Assembly (NCBI RefSeq): GCF_037042905.1 | Contig: NC_087247.1 | Location: 41,664,001 to 41,728,000, forward strand | DNA: 64,000 nucleotides | Direction: 5' to 3' | Source: Lytechinus pictus | Lineage: Eukaryota | Shown: positions 22,394-64,000 of the stretch, one piece after another | Layout: each line of letters opens with the position of its first letter | How positions within the stretch are numbered: position 1 is the first letter of the stretch | Program-made: the position numbers and the translations under genes | Notes under the pieces: model-generated | What the model saw: the letters and a program-made list of their open reading frames with translations, nothing else | Told to the model about the DNA's origin: nothing | Databases searched by the model: none

Positions 22394-25028
22394 TTCACAT
22401 AATCGATGCATTGCTTGTAACATCAAAAGAACATACGAAATATGAAAAGGGTAAGGCAGCATAATACCTTGCCAGACTCATGTTTCATTCCCGTGGGTTG
22501 ATATGATGTTGATTGGAGAGGTCCCTGGATACTTCTACGATAAGATGTAACTGACAGGCCTAGACGAGAAAGATTGCTTTTACGTGGGCAAGAGGAAGAC
22601 ATCAAAACAGCCTTGTTGTTGCTAGACTACTGAATAACAATGACACGATTAGTGTCACAAACTGAGATGGGTGTAACATTGCTGAGTATTATTGATCAAC
22701 AGAGGGATGAAGATTTCGAGGTCATCAACTTGGATTTCAGATTCATCATCGAGGTGAGTTGAGCAAATACATGTACTTTTTGGCAGGTAAATTCAAGAGG
22801 GAAATTGTAAATTGTTTCATCCAACTAGTACTAACTAAAGGCCTTTATCAAGTATCAACTCACCATGAACTCATTATAATTAAAATCCATCCTCCTTAAC
22901 AATTTGGTAATTTTTCCATCAAATAACAAATAAGGGTAAATAAGGAAATCCTTAAAACATATATCTGTAGAAGTTTCATTGCAACATAACCAATTAAAGT
23001 TTGTTTGGGGACAGTGTGAGACAAAATTCACGGATTATTTTAGCATGTATGTTTTTGACTTGGAAGTCAAATATTTTCATGCTCTGAAAACAAAATGGCC
23101 ATTAACCAAACCCAAAGAATACGCCCTCGTCTTTACGACTGTTCAAATTCAGGGATTCTGTTGAATTTGGCAACAAAACTTCGATTCGTGATTCTGAGGT
23201 ACAGCAGAATTTATATAAAACTACATTCCAGCAAATTTGACTTATTTCTTGCAACTATGTTTTATTTCAACATGAAGAGAGTGGGTTGTTCGCAGCACCA
23301 AAAATTGTAAATTTCATGATCTTATAAATTTCATGATCAATTTAGGTAAGCGTGGGACGGCGTGAATGAGGGAAGAGGGGACCCTGGATCCCGATCATTA
23401 CATAGAGGAAAACTCAACAGTCATATCCCTTATGAAACCCTTAACATATCAAAAGCCCTATGATTGGTTAATATCGACTGAAATCGCATAAATCAATTTT
23501 TTAAATCCCTAAGGTGGTAACGAAATTGTAGATCCTACAACTATTTTCACACTTAATTTTCACATTAGTTCACTGTAACACTTTATTAGGCTCACTAACT
23601 CTTACAAACACCATCAATCCAGCAATCATTACTTAACTGTTAAAGAAATACTTAATAAGCTAAGGGCAAGATGACTAAGTGGGATTAGCATGGTTTGTAA
23701 TGACCAAACAGTGATCACTACTCACCAGGGGACCACCTGTTGGTTTAAAGGTGATTCACCTGTCTTACAAACGACACCATCGTCTGTCACTCCAACTAAT
23801 TACAACAATAGGTCCTGACCTTATCCAAGACTAGTTGACTTTTACTTTTTCAGAAACTTGCTAAAAAAAACTTTTGCATTATATGTAAATTCATATCTGC
23901 ATAATGCCTTAATTATAACAAATTTAGAACTTGTATTTATACAACAATGAGTAATGCTGTTATGTAAATTAGCTTTTGTTTGCTTAAAATTTTATTCCAC
24001 AAGACCTTGAATAGTAGAGTGGAAACATGAGTAAGTGACGGTACCTGTCCAACTAAATACCCTCTTGGACTGGTGTTGAGAGGCACAGTTACTATGTGAA
24101 CCACACAGATGTATCATTAACGACTGTTACTGCTCATTAAATCCACAGACTGCATTTATGGAAAGTACCAAAACTTGATATCTGAGATAGTAGTATTCTA
24201 GAGTAATTGCCACGTATTTGTCATAAATGTGTACCTTGTATTGTTTTTTTATGAGTTTCATGAATACTATCCATCAATAATTAAAATCAATCCAACAAAC
24301 CAACGAGCTTCAGTTTGAAACTCATACACATTTCCCGTCAACATGGTCAAAACAGCTCGTTTTACATATCTGCAAACATTCTGTGAAAATTCTGTCTTTC
24401 TATATTATATCGCCTTCTTTATAACATCCACACATTTCTAGATATCTTGGGGAGGGAAAAGTGGGTTTCTTTAAAAACTTTAGCACATGACATGTGACTC
24501 TGTATAGTGGAGTTTTCATCCGAATGGCACGCACATGCCCCTTGCCCAGATCCGTTGCTTTATTGCTACTTCCTTCAATAGGCCCAACGGTAGTTCGCAA
24601 CGATATCTTAAAATGTGGATATCATAAAAAAAAAAAATCGCATGATTTCGATCTACCCGCTTCTTCCTTCATCTATACATCTTAGCAGACGAACGCGCAC
24701 TGGGTGCCCAAACGCACGTCGTCAAGTATCATCTGTCTCCCGCAGCACCCGCGGATCTCATGACATCTTGCAAACTATCGAACACGAAAGAATAACAGGG
24801 AAAAGGAACGAAAGATTTGAAAATATATCATAATTTTTTTTAATTCAATTTCTTTGAGGGATCTCATGGCGGATAAAAGGCACCATTAGTTTTCTACTAG
24901 TTTGCCGAAATTGAAGAAAAAAACCTCATAAATTTGATGTGAGCAGAGAAGCATCCGACTAAACGCCTCCATTACGCTAGAAGTCTGTGCATCAAAAATA
25001 AATGAATGAAACCATGCCGAGCATCAAA

Positions 25029-25070
25029 ATGGCGAAAATATGGATGTTATCACTTCTGGTCATCTTCATG
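25029..25070 (+). CDS. Gene B exon 1: start codon and signal peptide
   Basis: caaaATGG context, [14 protein letters not shown], phase-0 donor ATG|gtaaat. Joined to the next exon it gives [22 protein letters not shown], a typical signal peptide. The link across a 16-kb intron is inferred. Confidence 0.65.
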
Positions 25071-40000: not shown

Positions 40001-43000
40001 GCGGGCGCTATACCACTGAGCCACCATATACCAGGTGGCATTGTTTAATGAAAAATAATGGCAAAGTGATGATATCATCAAATCTAAGCCATCATCACTA
40101 GCTTCATGATATGCTGCCTATTTAATATTAATTTTATTTTGTGCCCAGTGTAATAAGTTGAGCAATTTTAACAATTTTCCTTGCATTCAAAAGCATGTCA
40201 TTTTGGCACGAGATTGACATCATGTATATTGAGAAGTTTTCAATGTTAAATTTTCGTCGACCGAGACAAAAGGTTTACTGTAAACAAAGAGAAACATTTA
40301 ACGGTACTGACAAATTTGTTGTAACCGTGCCAAACTTCAATTAAAAAGAATATTGTCATTACTTTCAACAGTGACTTTCCTCGATGAATTCGTGAATCTA
40401 TTAGACCTATTCATCCATTATATACAAGTAAAGGGTAATTGTAATCATGTATTGTTGTTTTTATGTCATGTCGAAAGGGATGATGAAATTTCCATCAGAA
40501 AGAATGTGTCCTCTGTATGAAAAGCATTTATAGAACTTGCTGTGAAACTTAAAATAAGATAATTTACATATAATGTGGTACGAACTTTCACATAATGTGC
40601 GGAATATTGCTAATTTTAGAATCCCGACAGAATCTTTCTCTATGAATAGGCCAAGAGGACCGAGCAAAATTAAGAGCATTTTTTTAATGAGAAGGATCAC
40701 TTGAAACAATATGGTTGTAATAAATGTCAAATGATCTCATGATAGATGACCTCGGCCGATAACACACAAACCCGCCTTAAGACGCCACTAAATTGTTCTT
40801 CCGTTACAAATGACTTTTTTCGCAAGTGTCCTAATTGATTGCGATCTGAAGTTGATTGTGATAATTCGCCATTAAAAAACCTGTCCAATATTTAATCGAG
40901 ACGACAAAATTGCACTGTTTGAGAACATTGAAGTAAAATTCAAATGTTCTGGTATTTTAAGAATGAAGCTGATATTTCATTAAACTATATCTTTCAAGTG
41001 AGACTTCCATTTCAGAGCATCTTTTTCTGCATCATTTAGCGATTCATTTATACTAACTATTCATCTACTAATAAGAGAGATAATGCACACATGTATTTGA
41101 TTAAATTTTGTGTTCTCAGTTAAATGATTCACTGTATATAATATAAATTTTAATTCACTGATTTTCAATATTAAAGTTCAACGTTTGTTGATAATAATGT
41201 TTTTTTTTTTTTTTTTTGGGGGGGGGTGGGGGCGTTTTTTCCTATTTCCCTGTTTGTACATACGTATATGCATGTAAAATTGTGAAATATTCTAATTTCT
41301 CTCCTGCGGATTATATAGTATTAGTTCAAGTGAAAACACTATTGAGATATAAACTAACTTCTACAATTGGTTTTATTTATATTGTTCTCGAATGTTAGAG
41401 CATCGTATACGTATCATGTGAAGTGACGGTCTCATTTAGACTGAAGGCTTACCTGAATGAGAATAGCAGATTGCTTGATGGCCAATGCTGTGATAATGTA
41501 GATCGACCATGCAGTGACAGATGTGATAACAGCTTCGATCTCTGCTTCGGGCCCCCGGGAAAGTAAGTGTTGCATTCTGGGTAACTACTATGTATGAAAA
41601 TTAGGATACAAAAATCAGCGATTATAAAGAATTTAATACTATTGTAACATTACTATTATAACTCATACGAGATAACATATACCTCTTTCATAATAATGAT
41701 AAATAAATAAATACATACATAAATTATAACAATAACACAAGGCATAAGCGATTTTGTGTCTCGCCCACTTATGAAAATAACCAAAAATATTGTCATTTGC
41801 TAGGGCACGCAACAGAATTGTATCAAAACTTCATTGTGAAATGACTGGGATAGAATAACACTTGTCATAAGAGTCTTGCCCATAAACTTTAATGTTGACC
41901 TCAAAATGAACTTTGACCATACCATGTGACCTCCGAACACAATAACATGCAGGTCTCCTAAGTACACCTACAACCCAAGTTTGGTCGAAAAGTGACTTAC
42001 GGTTGCGGAGTTAGGTGTCATAAGAGAGTCTTGCATGTAAACTTTAACGTTGACCTGAAAATGACCTTTGACCTTACCATGTGACCTCCGACTGTAGCAT
42101 AACATGCAGGTCCCCCAAGTCTATCTACCATCCAAGTTTGGTTGAAAAGTGACTTATGGTTGTGGAGTTAGGTGTCATAAGAGAGTCTTGCATGTAAACT
42201 TTAATGTTGACCTGAAAATGACCTTTGACCTTACCATGACATGCAGGTCCCCCAAGTCCATCTACCATCCAAGTTTGGTTGAAAAGTGACTTACGGTTGC
42301 GGAGTTAGGTGTCATAAGAGAGTCTTGCATGTAAACTTTAACGTCGACCTGAAAATGACCTTTGACCTTACCATGTGACCTCCGACTGTAGCATAACATG
42401 CAGGTCCCCCAAGTCCATCTATCATCCAAGTTTGGTTGAAAAGTGACTTATGGTTGTGGAGTTAGGTGTCATAAGAGAGTCTTGCATGTAAACTTTAACG
42501 TTGACCTGAAAATGACCTTTGACCTTACCATGTGACCTCAGACTGCATCCCATCATAACATGCAGGTCCCCCTAGTCCATCTACCATCCAAGTTTGGTTG
42601 AAAAGTGACCTACGGTTGTGGAGTTATGTGTCATAAGGTTTGTGACGGACGGACGACAGACGACATTTGGATCCCTAAGTCTCGCCTTCATCTCCGGTGG
42701 GCCAGACAAAAAATGATAATAAATAAATAAATGAATGAATATATAAACAAATAAATAAAGATAAGAATAATACTGATAATGGTTTTGAAAACACGAATTA
42801 AGATAAGATTTAAAAATAAAACTAAACAGTACTACTCATAAAATGACACTCGATTGAGCTAAAGAGTAATCAATATAATTATCATAATGAAGGGATGAAG
42901 GAAATGCTTTTTTTTTGTGGAAATACACTATCATAAGTTCATATTCAAACATAAATAGTATATGAATGATCGAATGCATGTGCTCCGTAAGATGCATTCC

Positions 43001-46000
43001 CAAACACTTCAATGTTATCTCAATTTAAATCTAGTATATGAATAGTGTATAATATGAGACAGGCTATGACAGGGGGTCCAAATATATGTTCATTATAGAT
43101 TAAAGATAAGATGTCTGGTTTCTGCAAAAACTTTACGGCCCCTAATATAAGGCAGTTTCCACGGCTTCCTGGTTAGTTACCAGACTATTAAACTGTCATT
43201 CCTAAAATAGCACCCTTCATCTCCTTGCTTTCAAACTAGCTGTAGATAGATGGAATGGACAACACCCAGTTGTTCATTTACATTCAGGTTATGATATATA
43301 CATGTGTATTATATTAGAAGCTTTCTAGTAATCATGAGCAAAAACATATTCATATGTATATTAGAAATTGGGTCGGAAAATGCTTGCTTCTGTAGCGGAA
43401 ATTTAGGTCCGAATATATTGAATTTCGAATAAAATATTTGGAATTTGAACAATTTAATATATACAAACCGTTTTACATAACATGTTATGTTAAAATTAAA
43501 AATTAACAATTGAAAGAAAAAACGTTTTTAAGAATGTTAGTTGTAAACAAATAAAAAATATACTGCAAACGTAAGGTGGAACGTCTTCAAAGCTATGATA
43601 TATTTTAATTTTCCTGTAATCTCCTTAACATGACCAAATAATTTTTTTTTTCAAATAATAAGGTCTGTATATTCTATAAAATTTATAATAGTGCTTATAG
43701 ATACTAACGACAAAATATAATGTCTATTTTCAGTGACATCGACATGGCGAATTGTCCTTACGGACGCTTACGAACAGGGGCTGTCTTTGACAACCAGGAC
43801 GACTTCCCATTTCCTGAAATCCTCTCTGGAAACATTCCCAATCCGATGTTGATTAAGGTCCGGGAATGGGAGGTAAGCCAATAATGTGATGATAGGTGAT
43901 TCTATTATGACTGTAATCTTAACATTTCAGTAAGAATTTAGTATTTACAAATTTAACTAGGCTGTCTGCCTAGAAACGGCGTATTATATAATGTGGGCAT
44001 GCCTCCGACGAAGATTCTGCTAGGATCGAAAGCTTATGCCCCTTATGACTTTCTAATTTACTCCATTGGCTCTCTTTTATTAGATAAGCATTTTTCAGCA
44101 GCTTCTTTTTGCCACAAATTTAACTTAGTAGAATAGACTTAGATCCAAAGGCAGCGGTGAATGGGGTTGGTGTATCCCACAGATTTAGTGTGGTATCCAA
44201 GATGATGAAGAAGTCTTAGAGATAATTTTGGATAACACTAATCGAATAAAGATAATGAAACATGTTTTGCTATAATTTGTGAACCAAATCGAAACAATTG
44301 AAAATCATCACCAGTATTATTTACCTCTGAGCTGATGGAGGGAGGTACACATGCCCACCTATTACATGGATTTCAATAATTTTGTTGCTGTCTGCCTAGA
44401 AACGGCGTATTATAAAATTTGGGCATCCAAGTGACAAATCAAATGTAGATGTATATTATTTGAACAAAATTAGTAACTTTCAGGATCTAGATTCATGTTT
44501 CAGATAATGTTTAGTTAGTGCTTAAAAAATCCAAAGAGCTAACTGGTAAGGTAGCTTAATCAAATCCGATAGAAAATCCATGCATGGTCAGGGTTGACAA
44601 GGAGCTCAGTTAGAATTTGAAAGTCACATTGTTTATATTAATACAAAAAAAGACGTCACGACATGGACAACAAGCAGCCTGTAAACTCTTCGACACTCTC
44701 TTCAGGTGTCACTTCAAAAGCAATCGGCATACAATCTGACATATACCTTTCAACGCATTACGCATAATGCCGATTTTATCTTCCATGTGTGAAGAACCTT
44801 AATTGGCAAGCATTCAAATTTGTCAGGTAGTGAAATATATGACGATAAGTATATACCACGGTTCTATTCCATTCGTTTGAAATATCTCTCAAAATTACAT
44901 AAGTTTGAAAAATAAAACATCCTTTTTGATCCTCTTAATGATTTCACTGGAATAACGGTTGTCATACCATAACTTACCATGAAGTATGACCTTATTTAAA
45001 TTAGATGAGACGACACTGTTAGGATTCACGTTTTCTCAACGGCTTGTGAACTGATTTCGAAATTGATGGTGATTTTTCGTTGATTTGAAGAAGAAAAAAA
45101 ACGTTTGTTTTATTTCATTCAAACTTATGTCATGGCATTCATATAGATATAAAGATTTTTATCTCTGTTGTCATCTGGCTTATCTCGTCTCACATGATCC
45201 TCATGGGGAGGGGTGATCTGTTTAGCTTGTAACTAGGGTAAACTGCTATTAATGATTGAAAGGATATAAAGTTTTATATCATGAAAAGGACATTAATATA
45301 TCACATAACGATGATTGATCCTATAAATGATATTCAACGATAAATATTGTACTATCAGATAAACATCATATTTCGAAATCTTTAGGGTATTGTGAGATTC
45401 TGGGGGAAAAAAAGGACAGTGTTAGGAAGTTTTTCCTCGACCAGACTCCTAGGCATTTTCCTTAACGACGGAACATAATCATTGAGACAAGGCGGATGGA
45501 TTGGGGTACTTCATCACAAAGTCAAACGGATAGACATCACGTACCGCTTGTTTTTTTAAAACCGATATGATAGTGGCCATGAGATAACCATCTTTGTAAT
45601 TCTTCAATACATTGGCTTTCTTCTTTTTCCTTTACAGAGAGGTATCAGGGTAAAGGTCGGTGTTTGGGATATCGATCTAGGGCATGAGCCAAACAGTGTC
45701 GATTTCTACACGAGGAATTTCGCCATCCGACCCGACATCAACTTGATCGAAGCGCCAATCTTTAGATACACGCTTACTGGTGATGGATACACAGAGTAAG
45801 AAATTATCCTAATTCCTATAAGGCTTCTATGTATAAAGCTGATTGCTCGGACTTGAATAAAACATATAAATAGACATAAAATCATACCTTTCGATGTTGA
45901 TTCTTCATATGACGCTGAAAGAGAAATGTGCAACTGAGAAGATTCAGCTGGTCTCGTTTTAAAGCAAGCTTAGAATAAGTGCATGGTATGCATGGCACAA

Positions 46001-49000
46001 GCAAGAATTATTTTTGGTTGTCGTATGTAAATGAAGTAATAATAACAACCAAAACGAGTCTAAAACTTACTTACCTATTTTACCCATATCATATAAGAAG
46101 ACTAAAATCATGCAATTAAGACAGTTAATTTAGTGATAGGTCCGCAGGAAATAAAAACTTCAGATCACCAATTGTGTTGAAAACTTCGTCACAAAGTCTA
46201 CTGCCTAATAATGTTCTCATCATTAACATATGAATATGTATCTTCTCTTCAATATTTATGTCTTTACCTTTTCTCACGAATATCTTCAATTTTTCCAGAA
46301 CGAAAGTGGAGATTAGAGTATATTGTTCTGAGCATTTCTATGGTGGCAGTTGCGATGTATATTGCAATCCTGGAGAAACGGGTCATTACAGTTGTAATAT
46401 CCTTTCTGGCGTGAAGGAGTGCTTCCCTGGTTGGGTTGGACCAGAATGCGATGTGGTGAGTCTTCATAATCATGATAATGAGGGTTCTATCAATAGAATA
46501 CTATCCTTGGAAAAATATTAACTCTACAAATTATCATTTGTAACCGTGTATGATCTGTAATGGCAAGAGAGTCAATGCTAGAGTATAGAAGAGTCTACGA
46601 TATCATTGATCGGATTCGGTTTTAGCTATACTTGCCGCCATCTACCCAGAAGATATTTGGATAACCAATAAAATACGAAAGCCTTGTATTATGGGAAAGC
46701 GATTTGCTATCCCTTGCTGGAAAGGTCCCGATACCAGGGTGTGGAGAAAGTTCATTCATTGTGAGCGGGCTAGCAAGCATTAGAAGGAGAAATATATTTT
46801 GCTAATAATATTTAAAAGACTAATGATCTAAATTCTCGATGTATTTGGTCGGTGTAATGATGAGTGCATAAACATATTTTCCGACTCCGACAACAATCAA
46901 AGGCATTTTCGATCGTTTATAATCATTAATCGACTGAGCATAACAATGGTATTATAGAATTGAAGACCACAAATTGCGCGATGGCGCATACACTGTTAGA
47001 AAATTTATCCTTAAAATAAAAGAAGTTCCTGCAGCAGAGTCTCGAGAACACCTGTAATCTTACCAGATTGCGTAATCTTACAGGAAATTGGTATTTGGTG
47101 TGTGGAACCTTACAAATTTCCTTAAATAAAACACAATTTTCCCCCTTTAAAACAGACCTGTTCTGTTAAATTGCAGAAAAATTCCTGTTTTATGAATTTA
47201 CAGAACGATTCTGTTATTGCTTTCTACAAAATCAGGTTTTTTTAACAGTGTACGTAGGAGCGATTATCTGGTAGCCTGAAGGAGTTGCGAGTTTAGTTTG
47301 GTCAAATGACAGGGTTATTAACCTAAAACAACATGACTTAAATTTCCCGTCTTCTGACGATAAACTGTCTAGTCCTGCTTTGTGTCTTCAATTTTGGTGA
47401 AAAAGTGAATTACTTTCAATGTATGCTATTGATAAAAATTCTTTGTTGTTCCTTTATTTTCGATTTTCTGGACAGAATGTAAATGAATGTGCATCTCGAC
47501 CGTGTATGAACGGTGGTACTTGTGTCGACTTGGAAAACGGATATGAATGTACATGTGTGGACGGAGCAATAGGTAAGGGTTCTACGATTCTAGAAAATAA
47601 GTTTATATCGTCCATCCATCTCTTTTCTTATTCTTTATATTGAGCGTAAGTAGTCAATAGAGGATAAATTTTGAAGGGGGATTTGCCCTCCAAGAAAGTC
47701 AATCACACAGCAAGTGTCATATAATAGGGATTCTTAAATGACCAAAAGGTTGCATTCTTGGAACCGGGGACCATTCGAGTAATTTAAGACATTTACCGGA
47801 TGCCATCCATGGCACTTTGACCTAAAGCTCAGCCGAGGTTAATTCATGTCAGTATTGTCAGCCGAAAGAAAACGTCTCATCCGACATGTCTGGTAAAAGT
47901 AATTTAACTACCCGAAAGGTAAATGTTTTCAGTAAGTCAATGTCGATATCAATTTATGTATTTTCAGGAACCCACTGCGAGCACAATCCTGACGACTGCA
48001 GAGGAGTCGAATGTCTACACGGCGGACAGTGCATTGATGGCTATGCGTCCTTCACCTGCCGATGCCAACCTGGTTACACCGGGATCATGTGCCAGTTGAA
48101 CATTGACGAGTGTGCATCATCGCCATGCAGAAATGGTGCGCTATGTCAAGATCAAGGAAATGCCTATTCATGCTATTGTCTGGCGGGATTCTATGGTGAA
48201 AACTGTCAACACGAATTTGATGAATGTAAAATACTCAAACCCTGCAGGAATGGAGGAACATGCTATGACAGAGTAGCATCCTTTCACTGCGAATGTATGA
48301 CAGGATTCGGTGGTCCTGACTGCTCCGTTAACCTTGATGAATGTGCAAGCAGCCCGTGTGCGAATGGCGCTCAGTGTATCGATTCGGTTGCTGGTTTTAT
48401 CTGTCTTTGCAACGAAGGGTTCCGAGGACTTCTTTGCGAGGAAGACGTCAATGAATGTGCGAGCAACCCTTGCGAAAACGGAGCGAGGTGTGTTGACTTG
48501 GTAGACTCATACGAATGCCAGTGCCTTCCAGGATATCTCGGAGAGAATTGTCAGTTGGAATCAGATGAGTGTGCTAGCAGTCCTTGCTTAAACGGAGGCA
48601 GGTGCTTGAATCGAATAAACGAATTTCGATGTAGATGTCCAGCGGGTTACAGTGGAAGCAGGTGTGAGGTCAACGTCGATGAGTGTGAAAGTTTACCATG
48701 TTTTAATAACGCCACCTGCACAGACCAAGTTGATGGTTTCCAGTGCCAGTGTACACTAGGGTTCACAGGAACAACTTGCAGGATAAATACTGATGAATGT
48801 CTCAGCTCTCCTTGTCAGAATGGAGGTCAGTGTATTGATGGTGTAAATGGATATTTATGTGAATGCAGACCAGGTTACTACGGAAAGAACTGTAGAAGAG
48901 ACATCAATGAATGCGCGAGTGATCCTTGTAAGAACGGAGCGATTTGCCGTAATTTAGTTGACGGCTACGAGTGTGAGTGCATGGTTGGGTATGAAGGGAA

Positions 49001-52000
49001 ACACTGCACAACCAACATCAACGAATGCGCCAGCAATCCCTGTCTTAACAGAGGTTCATGTATAGATCAGATCAACGGATATTTCTGTAGATGTAGGCCA
49101 GGGTGGGGTGGGCGGCATTGCGAGATCAATGCCAATGAATGTTCAACGGAACCATGCATGAATGGAGGACGGTGCATCGACGCTGTCAATGGATTTTTCT
49201 GCCGTTGTCGACCAGGATTCCGTGGTCGCCGTTGTGAGATCGACAACAACGAATGCGCAAGCAACCCATGTTTGAATGGAATGTGTTTAGATGGGATTAA
49301 TCGATTTATTTGTCACTGCATACAGGGCTTCACTGGAAAGAATTGTGAAATTAATATCAATGAATGTGCATCTCGCCCATGCAAAAATAATGGAGTCTGT
49401 CGAGATGGTGTGAGTGGTTACACTTGCGTTTGCCCAGCAGGCTACGGAGGCAAGGACTGCCACATTAACATCAACGAATGCTCTACTGGTCAGTGTCAGA
49501 ATGGAGCTACGTGCGAGGATGGAATCCATGGATTTACCTGTCACTGTGCACCTGGATTTGAAGGTATTCTCTGTGAAACGAACATTGATGAATGCGCAAG
49601 CAGACCTTGCATCAATAATGCAAGATGCATTGATGGGGTCGACAGTTACAGATGCGAATGTTTGATCGGGTATGAAGGATACAACTGTGAGGTCAACATC
49701 AATGAATGTGCTTCAAATCCTTGTCGTGGATTGTCCACCTGTGTCGATATGATAAATGCGTTCCGGTGTGACTGTATTGACGGATACTTCGGCAGCTACT
49801 GTGAGACTGAAGTCAATGAATGTCTAAGTAACCCTTGCTTGAACGATGGACAATGTGTCAATCGTTTAAATGGTTACAGATGTAGTTGTCAACCAGGATA
49901 TGAAGGCCCTCATTGCGAATTTAATATCAATGAATGTAGCCGTCAAACCTGTCAAAACAACGGCAGATGCATAGATGGCGTTGGCAAGTTCTTTTGCTAC
50001 TGTCGTTCTGGATTCCGCGGGAAACACTGTGAGGAAAATATCAATGAATGTGTGAACCACAAGTGTAAAAATGGCGCAGGTTGCAGAGATGCGTTGAATG
50101 GTTATTCTTGCATGTGTACCGAAGGTTATACGGGGATTTTCTGCGAAGAAGACATCAACGAGTGCAATTTAATGATCGAGCCTTGTCCACCTGAAACTTC
50201 ATATTGTAAAAATCTTATCGGGACCTATGAATGCTCGAACATAGCTCCAACCACAATTCCACCACCAACAACTACCGAAGACCCATGTGGGTCAATGCCG
50301 TGTGAGAATGGGGCCACCTGCATAGTCACGTCAGAAGGAAAAAGGTACACCCCCATCTCTTTATGGGTAGATATTAAACATAAACATTTATAATAGAAAA
50401 AACAATTATTTTAATTGGTACACTAAATTTTAAACCGTTTTGGGGGACAGATTTGTAAGCCCAAAGGAATTAAAACGTGATTCAGGCATTTACAATTGTA
50501 TGTAATTACAATTGTTAGAGAGATGAAATACACGACAAAGACAGAAACATATCTGACGGAAAAATAAAATTGTTTTTTTTTTCTTTTGATATATTACCCT
50601 GATATAATGTGTTCTACCATTCCATCACCCCTCACTTCCTTTACATGAAACGTAGTCTTTATGAGCAATATGTTTCCCTCTCTTTTTATTTCTGAAATAG
50701 ATGTATTTGTCCCGGTGATTTCGTGGGAGAAAATTGTGAAATTTCGTTTGGTAAGTACATAATATTTATGTCAGCCAAAATTTGCAGTCACTGTGATATA
50801 TCCATCAAGAGATGTCAAAATGGCATCTTTAGCATGACCTTTTCTCAAAGAGGTAAATTTCAATCGATACGTTAACATTCCTGCTAAACTGGTTGCCTCC
50901 GATTCGACCCCATGATATTTTACTCATTCAAAATTCGTGCAAAAATATAACAAACTGACAAAAACACTTGTATCGCCCATTGGACACGCATGATAATGTT
51001 TTGCAGGGCAATGTCTAGCAGGTGTGTTATAAAAAGAGCAAAATTTTAAGGTTCATTTCACTTGTCTTTATATTGCACATTACGACTTGCAGCTAACACA
51101 ATTACTGAGGTGACACTTGAAAATCACATCGACCCATCACTACCTGGTCTGGAGAAACGATTGGCAGAACTGATCCACACTGCTACAGGGAAAGAACCTC
51201 ATATCATGGTGGAAATCGATATCGTCAATGCCATCAACGGGTCATCATCAATCACAGGGTATGAAATAAACTATTTCTCGTAGTCAAAATATCGATAAAC
51301 CCATGATTCGAAGCATCAAAATATAACATCCTTACCAAACTGTCGGCCGCACAGAACGTCAAAGTCAAAACATTTATTTCAATGTGTAAGTAATGCATTA
51401 TTGTAACATTAGGCATCGCTGCCACATTACAGGTTGCAACAGGGCCTCAGCGCATTGCTATGCGTCAGTACAGATTGTTAAGAGACTAAACAAATGATGA
51501 CGGTACAGCTAAATTTACAGGGTTCTCGCTAAAGAAGCAATTGATGAAAATACTAGTGAGTGTTACCTCATTGGCATACGCGCACAAAGTTTTGTGGTTG
51601 CGGATCTGTGACCCGGAGTTACAACTATTGTAACTTTACCATTTTTTTGCAACTACCATTTAACATTGATTTTGATTGGCTGTTGACTCGTGTTACCATG
51701 GTAACTGTCATAATGAAAACGTTACAATAATTGAAACTCGTTGTAAAATTGGGCTCTGGACTTCACCGAGTTTACCCCCAATAGACAAATAATTCGTTCT
51801 CTCTCGCTTGTATAGGGAGTGATATAGACACGGAATGTCTGTCTAAACAGAAGCTCAATAGTCTAGTAACATAATGTATTCAATACTTAATTAGGATGAT
51901 ATGGCATTTATCTGTTATTTTTCTAGAGTGGGGCAAGAATAAATTTAGATTTAAAATGGGTGAGGCTGATAATCTGCATGCAATGCACTAAGGAGAGCAC

Positions 52001-54455
52001 TTGTAAACAGCGCACTCGTTTTCGAATGTCCACCTATACTACCGTTCGAAAGCTGCCTACAGTCTTTCAGGAGCAACTCAATGACATCCCTCCATTCTCT
52101 AAACAATGATAATAATGACAGAAACCATCGAGCGACTGTTAATTATTCGAACTTACTCTACCTGGTGCCAGAGTAGAACGTCAAGATGTTTGGTGTTTAA
52201 TGCCTTCAAAAGTTCAGAACTTTGATGGCTTCAGAACTATAATGGCACACTTATAACCAACCTTGACGATCAGGGGTGTACATATGTGACCCTGTGGGAT
52301 TCACATGGTTCAAATGGGGGATGACGCAATAGATCACCCCTACACCTTCGGAATTTAAACCAGTGTTGACGACTTAAACTCTGATTCAAGTTGCACCACT
52401 GCATCATCAGTTCATCACTATTACTCTAAAATGTGTTTAACCCGCCATCAAAATGTCTAATGAGGAACTTCATTCGAAGAGTATTACAGACATAGAGGGA
52501 ATATTTAGAACTCATCCACCACTTGATTGATATAATTACAGATAGTATTTCATTGTATTCATAAAGGATTCCTGGCCGAAGTATTTAATATACTGTTTTA
52601 CTATTTGAATTTTCTTGTACATTACAGAATGGCGTTTACAACCGTTGCATTCAACATGAGCGTCTTCAATTCAACCTTCAATGAAGACTCTTTAAAACTT
52701 GCCTTATTAACCCTCTCAAGAGAGGAACAAGATCTCATCATGAGCCCTTATAAAATATTTAATGAAACACCAGTAGTGGTTGAATTCAAGAATCCAGACA
52801 GGGTAAGTCAATGTAATAATAAGTACATAATTCAATCTTAACATTTTTCAGATTATATACATTACATAGCATTTTTGCTCTTAGAAGTTGAAAAGACTCA
52901 TTTGAACAACCAATAAATATTCTCCATTTATGATTTTTAAATAAAAAAAAAACCAACGCAAAACATGAGAAATACCTTACGATACTTCCAAGTAAATTTT
53001 GTGAGGTTTTTAGCTTGGATACTAGTACAACGTAACACAAATTCGTCACATTTGATATTTACTCCTGATCAAACCTGGGTCAAGAATATGGTTCCATTGT
53101 CATAATCGGCATTTTGATCCACGTTAACCATACGAAAAAGCATATACATGTAACTAAGCAGAGGTATCTCCATGTACATTTTCTTTTCAGACGTGGTCAG
53201 AACGGAACTGGTTTGTCATATTTCTTCTCTTTGTCTTACTAATATCAGCTGCAGTATTCGGCATCTGGTACTTGGATAAGTAAGAAATAGATTCTCTAAA
53301 AAAGTTTCTATCTACTTGTGTGTCTAATTGTTGTACTTGCACAGTACAGGAATAATAATTAACAGCTTGTCCAACCCTACCCCCTCTCTCTTTTTCTTCC
53401 TAAGCTCTGTCTATCCCTCTCTCAGCAATGAAGTTGAGGGATTGGCGAAGCATAGCGAGTGGAAAAGCATTTTCAAATTGTTATTTCAGTTTGGAAAATA
53501 TGATTTAAACAGATTAAAACTTAAAAAGCAAACACTGAAAATTTAATGAAATAAATGAAATTTGGTATTTTAAAGTTATGCACTATTTCTGTGAAACAAT
53601 TCAATGCATATCATCATGAATGTTCATTGATCGTGCTGACGATGCCCCCCCCCCCCCCCACACACACAAACTTTAAAGAAATTAATTGCATGAAATGGAA
53701 AGCAATCAACATCCTGCCCCATGCACATAAAACATTATCAATAATTAGGCCTATCGTACAGTTAGGCAATAGTTTTTGTAACTTATTTAGATACAAGGGA
53801 GAAACTAGTCAAACTAGAAACTGGTAAACCATAAATGACCAATGTAATATTTTTGTTTATACGGTCACATATGATGCAAAATCTTGAAAGGAACTTTTCC
53901 ATCCAAGTTCGATCAACTTTATAGTGTGTAGAGTTTTACATTTTGATTTATTTATTGGTATAAGTTCAGTCAGGATTTGATTTTAATTGACAGTAACTAC
54001 CAAACCCCCACACACCGATATTCAAACAGCTATTAAACTACGATCATGGGACTCTGCTCAAGCTTTAAAAAAGTAGGGTGTTCGTAATGTGTTTGCATTT
54101 TGATTGTGTGCCTTTAATACGAGTCTAAAACTACAGTACACCTTGAGGTAGACGTTGGATTCAAGGTAGTAAAAGAGTCATATCACAGGCTCACGGAATT
54201 TGCTGTCTGTACTTATACTCGGTTTGTTGTTTCTGTTGCTAAGGAGAAATGTTATGGGAATCTAATTTTTGTTCATATTGTAATTTAATGATGTTGCTTC
54301 AAAAGTGAATAGTACTTCTTAACCTCACGGTGTTCCGATTTCTCCCTCTGTTCCCTCTCTCCAGGCGATATCCGGCATGTGAAGGAGAAAGCAGAATGGG
54401 AAAATGGAAACGACTTTTAAACATCCCACAAGAGAAGGCTGCAGAAAAGAAATGA
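25029..54455 (+). CDS. Gene B: Delta/Serrate-like (MNNL/C2-DSL-multi-EGF) type-I membrane protein, non-canonical Notch-ligand-like, 1234 aa; exons 25029-25070, 41399-41562, 43734-43872, 45638-45795, 46299-46455, 47476-47572, 47968-50344, 50701-50750, 51093-51258, 52628-52802, 53191-53279, 54365-54455
   Basis: Twelve GT-AG-bounded exons join into one 3705-nt frame. Recognisable signal peptide, MNNL (CC..C..C..F.LC, CPYG, NP, W), six-Cys DSL, 21 full EGFs plus one truncated, TM helix and TGA at 54453-54455. Confidence 0.85.
27910..33272. mobile_element. Foldback non-autonomous DNA transposon, Academ-like
   Basis: TAT|TAGTCCGGGTTATAATTGAGC ... GCTCAATTATAACCCGGACTA|TAT. The outer ~700 bp of the arms are almost identical inverted copies; the inner arms are ~190-bp tandem units that switch orientation near 31110. 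TAG...CTA ends with a 3-bp TSD fit Academ. Confidence 0.85.
29413..30493. mobile_element. Non-autonomous hAT element nested in the foldback
   Basis: CAGGGTTGTT ... AACAACCCTG ends, subterminal GATTTAAATC palindromes and a perfect 8-bp TSD TTGCTCTA (29405-29412, 30494-30501). Confidence 0.9.
33747..33835. repeat. Small degenerate palindromic MITE relic
   Basis: TGCAGTCACA..GCGGCCGTAC ... GTACGGCCGC..TGTGCCTGCA inverted arms. Confidence 0.45.
34649..35603. mobile_element. Tc1/mariner-type MITE
   Basis: TA|CAGTGCGTA.AAAAAAAA.TTACACTT.GAAAA ... TTTTCAAAGTGTAAACTTTTTTTTGATACGCACTG|TA; inverted TTGAGTGAGCAC internal motifs. Confidence 0.85.
35725..35950. mobile_element. Short CAC-ended MITE at a TA site
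   Basis: TA|CACTCTTAAAAAGGTTGGGCAAAA ... TTTTGCCCAACATTTTAATGTG|TA. Confidence 0.6.
37727..37830 (+). promoter_or_regulatory. Candidate internal promoter (CCAAT plus TATA box) in gene B intron 1
   Basis: CCAAT at 37727 and TATAAATA at 37823-37830, followed ~170 bp later by donor CTG|gtacgt at 38001/38002. Motif-only evidence. Confidence 0.25.
39758..40026 (-). mobile_element. tRNA-derived SINE with (TTA)n tail
   Basis: Minus strand GGTGGCTCAGTGG (A box) ... GGTTCGATCCC (B box), then a body and an (ATT)n microsatellite at 39758-39803. Confidence 0.8.
41399..41562 (+). CDS. Gene B exon 2: N-terminal part of MNNL/C2 domain
   Basis: [54 protein letters not shown] resembles the Delta/Jagged N-terminus (L..F.N..G.L..G.CC...C...C...F.VC); donor AA|gtaagt. 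Confidence 0.85.
41737..42713 (+). mobile_element. Helentron/DINE-like non-autonomous element with five ~157-bp tandem repeats
   Basis: Starts ACAAG, with subterminal inverted repeat TGTCTCGCCCAC/GTGGGCCAGACA. Units start at 41864, 42017, 42174, 42311 and 42468, followed by a (GACG)n microsatellite, a 3' hairpin and an A-run. Confidence 0.8.
43734..43872 (+). CDS. Gene B exon 3: MNNL/C2 domain
   Basis: ttttcag|T GAC... gives [46 protein letters not shown] (C.YG...T, NP, W motifs); donor GAG|gtaagc. Confidence 0.88.
43961..44426 (+). repeat. 40-bp direct repeat (43961-44000, 44387-44426) flanking an insert that starts with a Penelope-type hammerhead-like motif
   Basis: GCTGTCTGCCTAGAAACGGCGTATTATA.AAT.TGGGCAT occurs twice with 2 mismatches. 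Confidence 0.8.
43995..44041 (+). ncRNA. Variant minimal type-I hammerhead-like motif
   Basis: CCGACGA-A, helix II GATTCT-gct-AGGATC, GAAA, palindromic AAGCTT, flanking GGGCAT/ATGCCC pairing; the core has C at the U4 position. Confidence 0.35.
45638..45795 (+). CDS. Gene B exon 4: C2 domain C-terminal strands
   Basis: Strong acceptor tttttcctttacag|; [33 protein letters not shown]...; donor GA|gtaaga. Confidence 0.85.
46299..46455 (+). CDS. Gene B exon 5: DSL domain
   Basis: [45 protein letters not shown] keeps the DSL six-Cys spacing plus the YG, GHY.C and GW.G..C motifs; acceptor ttttccag|, donor GTG|gtgagt. Confidence 0.92.
46991..47250. mobile_element. CACTG-ended MITE at a TA site
   Basis: TA|CACTGTTAGAAAA ... 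TTTTTTAACAGTG|TA. Confidence 0.8.
47476..47572 (+). CDS. Gene B exon 6: first EGF
   Basis: gacag|AAT GTA AAT GAA TGT... gives [32 protein letters not shown]; donor G|gtaagg. Confidence 0.92.
47968..50344 (+). CDS. Gene B exon 7: 2.4-kb EGF-array exon (19 full EGFs, truncated EGF, Pro/Thr linker, start of last EGF)
   Basis: Core of ORF 47886..50393; acceptor tattttcag|GA ACC CAC TGC, donor AG|gtacac. Confidence 0.95.
50701..50750 (+). CDS. Gene B exon 8: end of last EGF
   Basis: aaatag|A TGT ATT TGT... gives [16 protein letters not shown]; donor G|gtaagt. Confidence 0.88.
51093..51258 (+). CDS. Gene B exon 9: first half of SEA/ferredoxin-like module
   Basis: ttgcag|CT AAC... gives [56 protein letters not shown]; donor GG|gtatga. 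Confidence 0.82.
52628..52802 (+). CDS. Gene B exon 10: second half of juxtamembrane module
   Basis: attacag|A ATG GCG... gives [58 protein letters not shown]; donor AGG|gtaagt. Confidence 0.85.
53191..53279 (+). CDS. Gene B exon 11: transmembrane helix
   Basis: ttcttttcag|ACG TGG... gives [29 protein letters not shown]; donor AA|gtaaga. Confidence 0.9.
54365..54455 (+). CDS. Gene B terminal coding exon: short cytoplasmic tail
   Basis: Long pyrimidine tract ...ccctctctccag|G CGA TAT... gives [30 protein letters not shown] then TGA. Confidence 0.75.
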
Positions 54456-58644: not shown

Positions 58645-58890
58645 NNNNNNNNNNNNNNNNNNNNNNNNNNNNNNNNNNNNNNNNNNNNNNNNNNNNNNNN
58701 NNNNNNNNNNNNNNNNNNNNNNNNNNNNNNNNNNNNNNNNNNNNNNNNNNNNNNNNNNNNNNNNNNNNNNNNNNNNNNNNNNNNNNNNNNNNNNNNNNNN
58801 NNNNNNNNNNNNNNNNNNNNNNNNNNNNNNNNNNNNNNNNNNNNNNNNNNNNNNNNNNNNNNNNNNNNNNNNNNNNNNNNNNNNNNNNNN
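58645..58890. other. Assembly gap (246 N)
   Basis: Run of N. Confidence 0.99.
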
Positions 58891-63900: not shown

Positions 63901-64000
63901 GGAAGGTCTTGATGAAGACGAGGCTGTCTACATCCGCTACCGCCTCGATGGCAGTCTATTCAATCTCAGGAGACTGCAGGCCCACACAAAAACTTGTGAG
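60962..64000 (+). mobile_element. RTE/BovB-clade non-LTR retrotransposon, 5' UTR plus ORF, cut by the window end
   Basis: Abrupt rise in GC content near 60962, then ~720 bp of structured leader and the endonuclease-RT ORF. The 5' boundary is approximate. Confidence 0.9.
61688..64000 (+). CDS. APE endonuclease-reverse transcriptase polyprotein of the RTE element (open to window end)
   Basis: LKLACWNIRTM, DIAALSEVR, VYAPT, LGDFNARVG, HWHLIDY, TDH (APE) and KAAGVDGIP, NYRGITLL, QCGFR, FVDLTKAFD, GVKQGCVLAP, YRLDGSLFNLRRL (RTE/BovB RT). Both ends are in the same frame; first ATG at 61805. Confidence 0.93.

What the first reader, a model, noticed from the sequence alone, without database searches (positions are those of the whole stretch)
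46299..46455. DSL domain has lost the canonical Notch-contact loop, and no DOS EGFs follow
Seen: [15 protein letters not shown]. Known: Delta/Jagged have C...C-RPRDD.FGHY.C, and these Arg, Asp and Phe residues are part of the Notch-binding face. All six Cys and the structural aromatics are kept, but the loop is shortened and has lost both arginines. The next EGF is a standard cbEGF, not a short DOS-type repeat. Inference: the fold is conserved while the partner is changed or Notch affinity is weak.
Basis: partly seen in the sequence, partly recalled or inferred. Interest (0 to 1): 0.72.

Follow-up and report, generated by a model that had tools for sequence, protein, structure and literature searches.

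The report
Sea urchin Delta-like gene, eroded loop
This exon encodes the DSL (Notch-ligand) domain of an expressed sea urchin gene from a little-studied family of Delta-like membrane proteins; in this copy the loop that normally touches Notch is shortened and rewritten, so it is probably not a standard Notch ligand.

Summary
Window 46299-46455 (+) is exactly one exon, with both splice junctions seen in RNA-derived contigs. It encodes a true DSL domain (Pfam 44 bits; AlphaFold model matches DLL1/Jagged/DLL4 DSL domains). The Cys3-Cys4 loop is NPGETGHYS, 9 residues against 11 in Jagged-1 (RPRDDFFGHYA). It lacks the equivalents of R201, R203, D205 and F207. The transcript joins this exon directly to a calcium-binding-type EGF, so no DOS EGFs follow.

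The gene is not a degenerate Delta or Serrate. The same genome has both of those, with 11-residue loops and DOS EGFs. This gene belongs to an echinoderm clade of DOS-less "Delta-like" proteins: MNNL/C2, DSL, about 21 cbEGFs, a juxtamembrane module, a TM helix and a short tail. This genome holds about 10 loci of the kind. Sea stars have the same architecture, and molluscs have DOS-less Delta-likes of their own, though the tree does not join them to this clade. Lack of DOS is family-wide and old. The loop shortening is recent, arising stepwise in the local tandem cluster (11, 9, 7 residues).

Loss or weakening of the canonical Notch contact is plausible (DLL3-like precedent) but untested. The urchin's own Delta also lacks both arginines, so arginine loss alone proves little.

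The scan had noted this gene before on this same window only (s1-306782), not on other DNA. Moderate interest.

The parts
25014..25070 (+). Exon 1, start codon and first part of the signal peptide ([19 protein letters not shown]), donor GT at 25071
Evidence: Sequence only. The 4333-nt spliced contig of run X1 leaves about 290 nt upstream of exon 2, which fits. Inferred.
41399..41562 (+). Exon 2, end of the signal peptide and N-terminal part of the MNNL/C2 domain
   Evidence: Pfam MNNL PF07657 28 bits against a cut-off of 22.5. Splice phases fit.
43734..43872 (+). Exon 3, middle of MNNL/C2 ([10 protein letters not shown]...REWE)
   Evidence: Phase-consistent GT/AG sites. Homologous exons are found in the paralogues. 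The head aligns with sea-star P0039 over residues 1-250.
45638..45795 (+). Exon 4, C-terminal part of MNNL/C2
   Evidence: The 3' junction 45795|46299 is seen in spliced contigs of runs X1, X15 and X5.
46299..46455 (+). Exon 5, the DSL domain (the finding)
   Evidence: Pfam DSL 44 bits. Aligned to PDB chains. AlphaFold model and Foldseek matches. Both junctions are supported by RNA contigs.
46366..46392 (+). Codons of the shortened Cys3-Cys4 loop NPGETGHYS (canonical Notch EGF11 contact loop)
   Evidence: Alignments. Loop-length census.
47476..47572 (+). Exon 6, first EGF after the DSL, calcium-binding type ([10 protein letters not shown]...)
   Evidence: Pfam EGF, hEGF and EGF_CA match; no EGF_DL_JAG or JAG1-like_EGF2. 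Junctions 46455|47476 and 47572|47968 are seen in RNA contigs.
47968..50344 (+). Exon 7, about 20 tandem EGFs, almost all cb-type
   Evidence: Pfam EGF in 20 stretches. 21 EGF patterns and 21 cb-type N-terminal motifs in the whole protein. Covered by spliced contigs.
50701..50750 (+). Exon 8, end of the last EGF ([16 protein letters not shown])
   Evidence: Junctions 50344|50701 and 50750|51093 are seen in RNA contigs.
51093..51258 (+). Exon 9, first half of the juxtamembrane module (no Pfam family)
   Evidence: RNA contigs. No Pfam hit. An equivalent module is present in gene 1 and in the sea-star proteins.
52628..52802 (+). Exon 10, second half of the juxtamembrane module
   Evidence: Phase-consistent acceptor and donor. 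Inferred from sequence.
53191..53279 (+). Exon 11, TM helix with the conserved motif (T/S)W..(R/E)NWFV
   Evidence: tblastn with sea-star P0056 hits here and at the TM exon of gene 1. Splice sites.
54365..54455 (+). Exon 12, short Lys-rich cytoplasmic tail ([30 protein letters not shown]) and stop codon
   Evidence: Strong polypyrimidine acceptor and matching phase. The lead came from s1-306782. Inferred.

Best explanation
The stretch is exon 5 of an intact, transcribed 12-exon gene (25014-54455, + strand; predicted 1239 aa) in a Lytechinus-type sea urchin genome. It encodes a correctly folded DSL domain. The gene is neither Delta nor Serrate. It is one of about ten loci in this genome of an echinoderm clade of DOS-less 'Delta-like' type-I membrane proteins. 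Their layout is: signal peptide, MNNL/C2, DSL, about 21 calcium-binding-type EGFs, an unassigned juxtamembrane module, a TM helix and a short Lys-rich tail. The clade's ancestor had a canonical-length PRDD-type loop, which sea stars and several urchin paralogues still have. After tandem duplication in the local cluster the loop was cut from 11 residues (gene 1) to 9 (this gene) and 7 (the next paralogue upstream). [quoted passage not shown] The most likely consequence is that the canonical DSL-Notch EGF11 contact is lost or strongly weakened. The protein would then not be a conventional activating ligand. It would act either as a weak or cis-acting modulator of Notch through its C2 domain and EGFs (as DLL3 does), or on another EGF-repeat partner. 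Shown: the anatomy, transcription, family placement and derived state of the loop. Inferred: the effect on binding and the function.
For: DSL and MNNL score above the Pfam cut-offs. The loop alignment to Jagged-1, Jagged-2, DLL1 and DLL4 structures shows the two-residue deletion and the substitutions. The conserved-face residues F199, R201, R203, D205 and F207 and their role in cis and trans interactions are taken from PMC3415683. GT..AG spliced contigs from three runs under two organism labels show transcription and a direct DSL-to-cbEGF junction. The genome has a Delta and a Serrate with 11-residue loops and DOS EGFs. There are nine further non-canonical DSL loci; seven of them, like this gene, have MNNL exons and a single cbEGF exon in the same exon layout. 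The head of this protein is closest to sea-star proteins P0039 (E 2e-43) and P0059, which have full-length MNNL plus DSL and no DOS. In the ML tree the echinoderm DOS-less clade has 97/93 support, gene1+gene2+pF 98/94 and gene2+pF 94/80. Loop lengths are 11, 9 and 7. Of 29 listed differences to organism B's transcript, 20 are synonymous and 9 are not, which suggests purifying selection on the stalk. There is a precedent for a divergent DSL that does not activate Notch, namely DLL3 (PMC2171428, PMC4391858).
Against: No binding or signalling data exist. DLL4 lacks DOS and is a strong ligand (PMC6986876). MNNL/C2 contacts Notch EGF12 independently of the DSL loop (PMC6202052). The urchin's own Delta has T and Q in place of both arginines, so the 'face' is not strictly conserved in echinoderms. 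F207 is already replaced in most members of the clade and in urchin Serrate (L). The AlphaFold model rests on an alignment of DSL domains, so its likeness to them is partly built in. Exons 1 and 10-12 are not confirmed by reads. No orthologue from a more distant urchin was found, so it is unknown whether the new loop is itself conserved.
Confidence: 0.6

Rival explanations
1. It is still a working, activating Notch ligand. Binding is carried by the MNNL/C2-EGF12 contact, the kept aromatic at position 199, the GHY core and downstream EGFs. The shortened loop only tunes affinity or Fringe sensitivity.
For: MNNL and DSL are both present and above the Pfam cut-offs. The protein is membrane-anchored with a Lys-rich tail that could be ubiquitinated. 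DLL4 works without DOS. Swapping contact residues between DLL1 and DLL4 had little effect in vivo (PMC6202052). Urchin Delta itself lacks both arginines. The gene is expressed and apparently under purifying selection.
Against: Four of the five residues shown by mutagenesis to matter in Jagged-1/Serrate are absent, and two backbone positions are deleted. The sister paralogue has lost four loop residues and falls below the Pfam DSL cut-off at 20.8 bits, which points to relaxed constraint on this surface in the subclade. The tail is only about 35 residues.
Confidence: 0.2
2. It has a Notch-independent role as an adhesion or matrix-organising surface protein. The long cbEGF stalk does the work, and the C2-DSL head is a structural cap or lipid-binding module.
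For: About 21 cbEGFs make up over 60% of the protein. Database names of relatives are 'fibropellin-1-like'. The stalk shows the synonymous excess. The loop varies freely among paralogues.
Against: The DSL scaffold (six Cys, GHY, G-W-x-G) and the MNNL are kept across sea stars and urchins, which implies constraint on the head. True fibropellins carry an avidin-like domain (P0329, PF01382) that is absent here.
Confidence: 0.15
3. It is a redundant tandem duplicate drifting towards pseudogenisation, and the loop deletion is the first neutral damage.
For: It lies in a tandem cluster of three. The sister copy has an even more eroded loop. Raw RNA-seq run X24 showed almost no reads on the exons.
Against: The predicted 1239-codon ORF across 12 exons is intact, with canonical splice sites. 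Full-length spliced contigs occur in several runs under two organism labels. All EGF cysteine patterns are intact, and the synonymous to non-synonymous ratio is 20:9.
Confidence: 0.05

Closest known systems
Delta and Serrate/Jagged (canonical DSL ligands; PDB 2VJ2, 4CC0, 4XBM, 4XL1, 5UK5)
   Same: [quoted passage not shown] DSL cysteine pattern, YG and GHY motifs are kept. The predicted DSL fold superposes at 2.0-2.8 A.
   Different: The loop is 9 residues, not 11, and lacks the R201, R203, D205 and F207 equivalents. There are no DOS-type EGF1-2 and no VWC. It has about 21 cb-type EGFs, a different juxtamembrane module and a roughly 35-residue tail. It forms a separate clade in the head tree.
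Echinoderm 'fibropellin-1-like / Delta-like protein' entries (Acanthaster P0039, Asterias P0056 and P0059) and the paralogues in this genome
   Same: Same architecture from signal peptide to TM, including a cbEGF directly after the DSL, the juxtamembrane module and the (S/T)W..NW(F/Y)V TM motif. Same exon layout in the urchin paralogues. Clade support 97/93.
   Different: Sea-star members and most urchin paralogues keep an 11-residue PRDD/RDN-type loop, whereas this copy has a 2-residue deletion. Sea-star tails are about 100 residues with NPxY-like motifs, whereas the tail here is predicted to be short.
Mammalian DLL3 (divergent DSL ligand)
   Same: The DSL domain is divergent at the Notch-binding surface and there is no DOS motif. 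It is a precedent for a DSL protein that does not trans-activate Notch but acts in cis (PMC2171428, PMC4391858).
   Different: DLL3 is a vertebrate Delta paralogue with 6 EGFs, so the origin is independent. Nothing is known of the function of the urchin protein.
DOS-less ligands: DLL4 and C. elegans DSL proteins; mollusc 'delta-like A/B/D' proteins
   Same: No DOS EGFs after the DSL. The mollusc proteins (Physella, Lymnaea, Pomacea, Babylonia, Sinanodonta, Haliotis) likewise have a cbEGF right after the DSL, and Haliotis has a 9-residue loop.
   Different: DLL4 keeps the canonical loop and is a strong activator. C. elegans ligands use separate DOS co-ligands (PMC2504490, seen in the listing and not read here; the DOS motif itself is described in PMC3415683). 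The mollusc proteins form their own clades in the tree.
Sea urchin fibropellins (SpEGF I/III)
   Same: Long arrays of cb-type EGF repeats. Automatic annotation gives relatives of this gene that name.
   Different: Fibropellin-1 carries an avidin-like domain (PF01382 in P0329) and has no MNNL/DSL or TM. This gene has no avidin domain.

Membership tests
DSL domain (Pfam PF01414) | Profile score above the gathering threshold | tested here: met
   44.0 bits against 24.2, E 2.8e-11; 43.9 bits in the genome-wide scan.
DSL domain (Pfam PF01414) | Six conserved cysteines plus the YG and GHY/G-W-x-G motifs | tested here: met
   C9, C18, C22, C32, C41, C50, G37 and G47 are invariant and Y30 and G44 nearly invariant in 39 aligned DSL domains.
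DSL domain (Pfam PF01414) | DSL three-dimensional fold | tested here: met
   AlphaFold2 model pLDDT 85.6. The top 22 Foldseek PDB matches are all DLL1, Jagged-1/2, DLL4 or fly Delta, with TMq 0.64-0.69 and rmsd 2.0-2.8 A. Caveat: the model is driven by the alignment.
Canonical Notch ligands (Delta/Serrate/Jagged) | N-terminal MNNL/C2 domain before the DSL | tested here: met
   MNNL PF07657 scores 28 bits against 22.5 on exon 2. Sea-star homologues match the full model (39-41 bits).
Canonical Notch ligands (Delta/Serrate/Jagged) | Conserved Notch-binding face of the DSL (Jagged-1 F199, R201, R203, D205, F207; 11-residue loop) | tested here: not met
   Only the aromatic at position 199 (Y) is kept. 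N, G and T replace R201, R203 and D205, and F206-F207 are deleted. Residues per PMC3415683.
Canonical Notch ligands (Delta/Serrate/Jagged) | DOS-type EGF1-EGF2 after the DSL (absent in DLL4, DLL3 and C. elegans ligands) | tested here: not met
   No EGF_DL_JAG or JAG1-like_EGF2 hit after the DSL. RNA joins the DSL exon to a cbEGF exon. Positive controls in the same genome and genus do hit.
Canonical Notch ligands (Delta/Serrate/Jagged) | Binds Notch EGF11-12 and trans-activates or cis-inhibits | not testable with these tools
   Needs binding and reporter assays. Complex prediction was not run (see Tried and rejected).
Serrate/Jagged subfamily | Juxtamembrane VWC/cysteine-rich domain and about 16 EGFs | tested here: not met
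   Exons 9-10 have no Pfam family and few cysteines. The Jagged clade is separate at 99/97.
Echinoderm DOS-less Delta-like clade (defined here) | MNNL-DSL-cbEGF array, shared juxtamembrane module and TM motif; monophyly of the heads | tested here: met
   Architecture and exon layout are shared with seven urchin paralogues and with sea-star proteins. Clade support 97/93, and the label needs one change on the tree.
Fibropellin (name given to relatives by databases) | Secreted EGF array ending in an avidin-like domain | tested here: not met
   No avidin domain in any exon; a TM helix is present. S. purpuratus fibropellin-1 P0329 carries PF01382.

The most novel reading that the evidence does not exclude
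The echinoderm DOS-less C2-DSL family is a diversifying recognition system rather than a set of spare Notch ligands. Under this reading each paralogue's Cys3-Cys4 loop (7 to 11 residues, very different chemistry) specifies a different EGF-repeat receptor among the many Notch-like and fibropellin-like proteins of echinoderms. The shortened loop of this gene would then be a gain of a new partner rather than a loss.
Probability: 0.12. Interest if true: 0.75.

Novelty: new variant of a known kind. Interest (0 to 1): 0.4.

Why it matters
Sea urchins are a classic model for Delta/Notch signalling in mesoderm and neural specification, and that work assumes one Delta and one Serrate. This genome also carries about ten expressed or intact-looking loci with a C2-DSL head. 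Comparative papers either lump such proteins with 'Delta' or leave them out (PMC2770060, PMC5356439). If some of them still touch Notch in cis or trans, they are unaccounted modulators of a much-used pathway. If they do not, they show naturally which parts of the DSL domain are scaffold and which are receptor contact. The local series of 11-, 9- and 7-residue loops is a ready-made set of variants for testing what the loop contributes to binding.

Tried and rejected
1. Orthologues in other urchins. Two searches with the big EGF exon (whole; unique C-terminal part) found nothing above 52% identity in the 435-1384 aa range. Whether the short loop is conserved beyond the two closely related organism labels is therefore unknown.

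2. phmmer of the DSL exon against 1.84 billion representatives. It gave 620 hits. The top ones are multi-DSL proteins, and the single-stretch hits checked by name are mollusc Delta-likes; none is a close orthologue (at most 52% identity). P0246, with a similar loop (NPGASDRYS), is an unrelated low-complexity protein.

3. Cytoplasmic tail. tblastn with sea-star C-termini found the TM exon but no tail exon. The tail model rests on splice signals only.

4. Raw RNA-seq run X24. It gave almost no reads on the exons, with about 6% of the run read. This is not evidence of silence, because spliced contigs exist in other runs.

5. A missed DOS exon in the 1-kb intron 46456-47475. Rejected, because there is no Cys-rich ORF there, the RNA junction is direct, and the intron holds a dispersed repeat.

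6. Rfam on that repeat: no family.

7. Complex prediction with Notch EGF11-12 was not run.

8. Pseudogene reading: rejected (intact ORF, splicing, 20:9 synonymous excess).

9. 'Fibropellin' identity: rejected (no avidin domain; a TM helix is present).

10. Rows left out of the tree: pC (near-copy of pB), pG (no head found), pH (head incomplete) and P0056 (N-terminally truncated). The urchin Delta head was only partly assembled and sits on a long branch, so its position is not reliable.
Full report
**What is at the coordinates.**
Window 46299-46455 on the + strand, read from 46300, gives [52 protein letters not shown]. An AG acceptor precedes the stretch and a GTGAGT donor follows it. Pfam calls it a DSL domain at 44.0 bits, E 2.8e-11, against a cut-off of 24.2. 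HMMER alignments to the solved Jagged-1, Jagged-2, DLL1 and DLL4 chains pair '[11 protein letters not shown]' with 'crprddffghyac'. On Jagged-1 numbering this gives N=R201, P=P202, G=R203, E=D204 and T=D205, with F206 and F207 deleted. MAFFT on 39 DSL domains places the same gap. In that alignment the six Cys, G37 and G47 are invariant and Y30 nearly so.

**Gene model and transcription.**
The exon belongs to a 12-exon gene:
- Exon 1, 25014-25070: start of the signal peptide.
- Exons 2-4, 41399-41562, 43734-43872 and 45638-45795: MNNL/C2. Pfam MNNL scores 28 bits on exon 2.
- Exon 5: the DSL domain.
- Exon 6, 47476-47572: one cb-type EGF.
- Exon 7, 47968-50344: about 20 EGFs.
- Exon 8, 50701-50750: end of the last EGF.
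- Exons 9-10, 51093-51258 and 52628-52802: a juxtamembrane module with no Pfam family.
- Exon 11, 53191-53279: TM helix.
- Exon 12, 54365-54455: short Lys-rich tail and stop codon.

The predicted protein is 1239 aa, with 21 EGF patterns.

Contigs of three public runs, under two coded organism labels, skip 45796-46298, 46456-47475, 47573-47967, 50345-50700 and 50751-51092, each with GT..AG ends. One contig is 4333 nt long. Such joints can only come from spliced RNA. The gene is therefore expressed, the finding's coordinates are exact exon borders, and the DSL exon is joined directly to the cbEGF exon. Exons 1 and 10-12 rest on splice signals, phase and contig length only.

Of 29 differences listed between the window and organism B's transcript, 20 are synonymous and 9 are not. 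This is a rough sign of purifying selection, because the list is incomplete.

**No DOS EGFs.**
The EGF after the DSL starts [10 protein letters not shown]. It matches EGF, hEGF and EGF_CA but not the DOS-type models EGF_DL_JAG or JAG1-like_EGF2. Those two models work as positive controls. They hit the exon after the DSL of this genome's Delta (38.9 and 35.7 bits). They also hit the Lytechinus pictus Serrate P0109 (59.6 and 31.8 bits).

**Organism and the canonical ligands.**
A genome-wide DSL scan gives two top hits of 66-67 bits. One is 98% identical over 117 aa to L. pictus 'jagged-1b-like', so the genome is a Lytechinus-type sea urchin and this hit is Serrate. Its loop is TPRDDLLGHYT. The other has MNNL, DSL, DOS EGFs and about 8 EGFs, and is Delta. 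Its loop is TPQDDIFGHFV. However, the urchin's Delta itself has T and Q where Jagged-1 has R201 and R203. Loss of the arginines is therefore weak evidence. What sets this gene apart is the deletion and D205->T.

**A family, not a one-off.**
The scan finds nine further non-canonical DSL loci:
- five at C3:33.28-33.55 Mb (here pA to pE);
- two beside this gene: 'gene 1', whose DSL lies 4 kb before the window and whose 1679-aa EGF exon opens the window, and 'pF', 53 kb before the window start;
- one at C3:47.03 Mb ('pH'), inside a 2565-aa open frame;
- a lone DSL exon on contig C5 ('pG').

Seven of them (pA-pF and gene 1), like this gene, show the same exon layout: MNNL exons, a DSL exon, a single cbEGF exon and then a large EGF exon.

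Their loops are QPTNSDRGHYS, LARDNNQGHYD (twice), LGRDDALGHYD, LARNDDLGHYD, KPRGDGIDHFY (gene 1), VDGPTYT (pF), RAPTFYDRYT (pG) and QDTNGDSGHYT (pH).

Sea-star proteins named 'fibropellin-1-like', or 'Delta-like protein' in UniRef (P0039, P0056, P0059), have the same architecture down to the (S/T)W..NW(F/Y)V motif at the TM. They have full-length MNNL and DSL matches and no DOS, and they keep 11-residue loops: VPTDDQNGHYR, KPRDNTQGHYG and SPRDDAYGHYT. The 250-residue head of this gene matches them best (P0039 E 2e-43).

An ML tree of 29 heads puts the seven urchin paralogues and two sea-star proteins in one clade (97/93), apart from Jagged (99/97). Inside it, gene 1, this gene and pF form the local tandem clade (98/94), and this gene and pF are sisters (94/80). 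The shortening is therefore derived and stepwise, 11 to 9 to 7 residues, whereas absence of DOS is a clade-wide, old trait.

DOS-less MNNL-DSL-cbEGF proteins are also common in molluscs. They occur in Physella, Lymnaea, Pomacea, Babylonia, Sinanodonta and Haliotis under the names 'delta-like A/B/D' and 'fibropellin-1-like'. Haliotis has a 9-residue loop.

**Fold.**
An AlphaFold2 model of the 52 residues, built with the 39-sequence alignment, has mean pLDDT 85.6. Its first 22 Foldseek matches in the PDB are all DSL domains of DLL1, Jagged-1/2, DLL4 and fly Delta, with TMq 0.64-0.69 and rmsd 2.0-2.8 A. 'Fold conserved' is supported, with the caveat that the alignment drives the model.

**What it most likely does.**
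Mutagenesis of Jagged-1/Serrate showed that F199, R201, R203, D205 and F207 form the face needed for both trans-activation and cis-inhibition (PMC3415683). In the complexes the DSL contacts Notch EGF11 and MNNL contacts EGF12 (PMC6202052). This gene keeps only the aromatic at position 199. I therefore think the canonical DSL-EGF11 contact is lost or much weakened, and that the protein is not a conventional activating ligand. DLL3 is a precedent for a divergent DSL protein that does not activate Notch but acts in cis (PMC2171428, PMC4391858).

Four things argue against overconfidence:
- DLL4 lacks DOS and is a strong ligand (PMC6986876).
- Exchanging contact residues between DLL1 and DLL4 changed little in vivo.
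- Urchin Delta lacks both arginines.
- The C2 contact may remain.

The rivals are a still-active ligand (0.2), a Notch-independent adhesion or matrix role (0.15) and a decaying duplicate (0.05).

**Literature and novelty.**
Comparative papers either call every VWC-less DSL protein 'Delta' or set aside 'Delta-like/DSL-like' proteins without analysis. The first kind reports 0-75 EGFs and at least three such sequences in S. purpuratus (PMC2770060). The second kind is PMC5356439. DSL expansions in molluscs are noted in PMC8166818. I found no functional study of the echinoderm clade in the library searched. I rate this a new variant of a known kind. It is a real and accurately described feature of moderate interest. 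The more interesting object is the family and its loop series rather than this single exon.

**Earlier notes of the scan.**
The same window carries notes on the whole gene (s1-306782) and on the juxtamembrane module (s1-306873). Nothing was noted on other DNA.

Noticed in passing
window 3-8700 (+), continuing upstream to G000:C3:41657300: Gene 1 is a tandem paralogue with the same architecture. Its MNNL and DSL exons lie 4-7 kb before the window (loop KPRGDGIDHFY). A single 1679-aa open exon of about 44 cbEGFs runs into the window start. It is followed by the same EGF/juxtamembrane exons (5234-5413, 5737-5964, 6224-6460) and a TM exon at about 8577-8666.
   Followed up: partly
window 46989-47233 (intron 5): A dispersed repeat of about 245 bp. 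There are at least 1,710 candidate copies genome-wide and the 40 scored are 94-96% identical. It has very high depth in all four runs laid and no Rfam family. It is probably a young SINE- or MITE-like element.
   Followed up: partly
window 41863-42637 (intron 2): A tandem array of 5.1 copies of a 157-bp unit with 78% matches. It gives a repeated pseudo-ORF ([31 protein letters not shown]) that is not part of the gene.
   Followed up: partly
window 61688-64000 (+): An open frame of 771 aa that runs off the window end. Read by eye it has endonuclease and reverse-transcriptase motifs of a non-LTR (LINE-like) retrotransposon; no family search was run on it. It lies downstream of the gene.
   Followed up: no
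window 58645-58890: A run of 246 N (gap or masked), flanked by Ser/Val-rich low-complexity sequence.
   Followed up: no
G000:C3:47034143-47034265 (L009, L040/L050): Paralogue pH. Its DSL (loop QDTNGDSGHYT) lies at the start of a single 2565-aa open frame packed with EGFs, with MNNL-like exons upstream. It may correspond to the many-EGF 'Delta' sequences (up to 75 EGFs) reported by PMC2770060.
   Followed up: partly
G000:C5:53411356-53411490 (L011, L038/L048): A lone DSL exon (loop RAPTFYDRYT, 37 bits). No MNNL or EGF exons were detected within 10 kb on either side. It may be a relic or a gene with very long introns.
   Followed up: partly
window 51093-51258 and 52628-52802; P0039 about 655-800: The juxtamembrane module of about 115 aa is shared by both window genes and the sea-star proteins and has no Pfam match. 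This was not tested structurally here.
   Followed up: no
P0039, P0056, P0059 C-termini: The sea-star family members have tails of about 100 residues with NPxY-like and YxxL/I-like motifs (NPAY, NPLY, NPVY, NDYIQL), read by eye. The urchin gene here is predicted to have only a 35-residue Lys-rich tail. Cytoplasmic signalling may therefore differ between classes.
   Followed up: no
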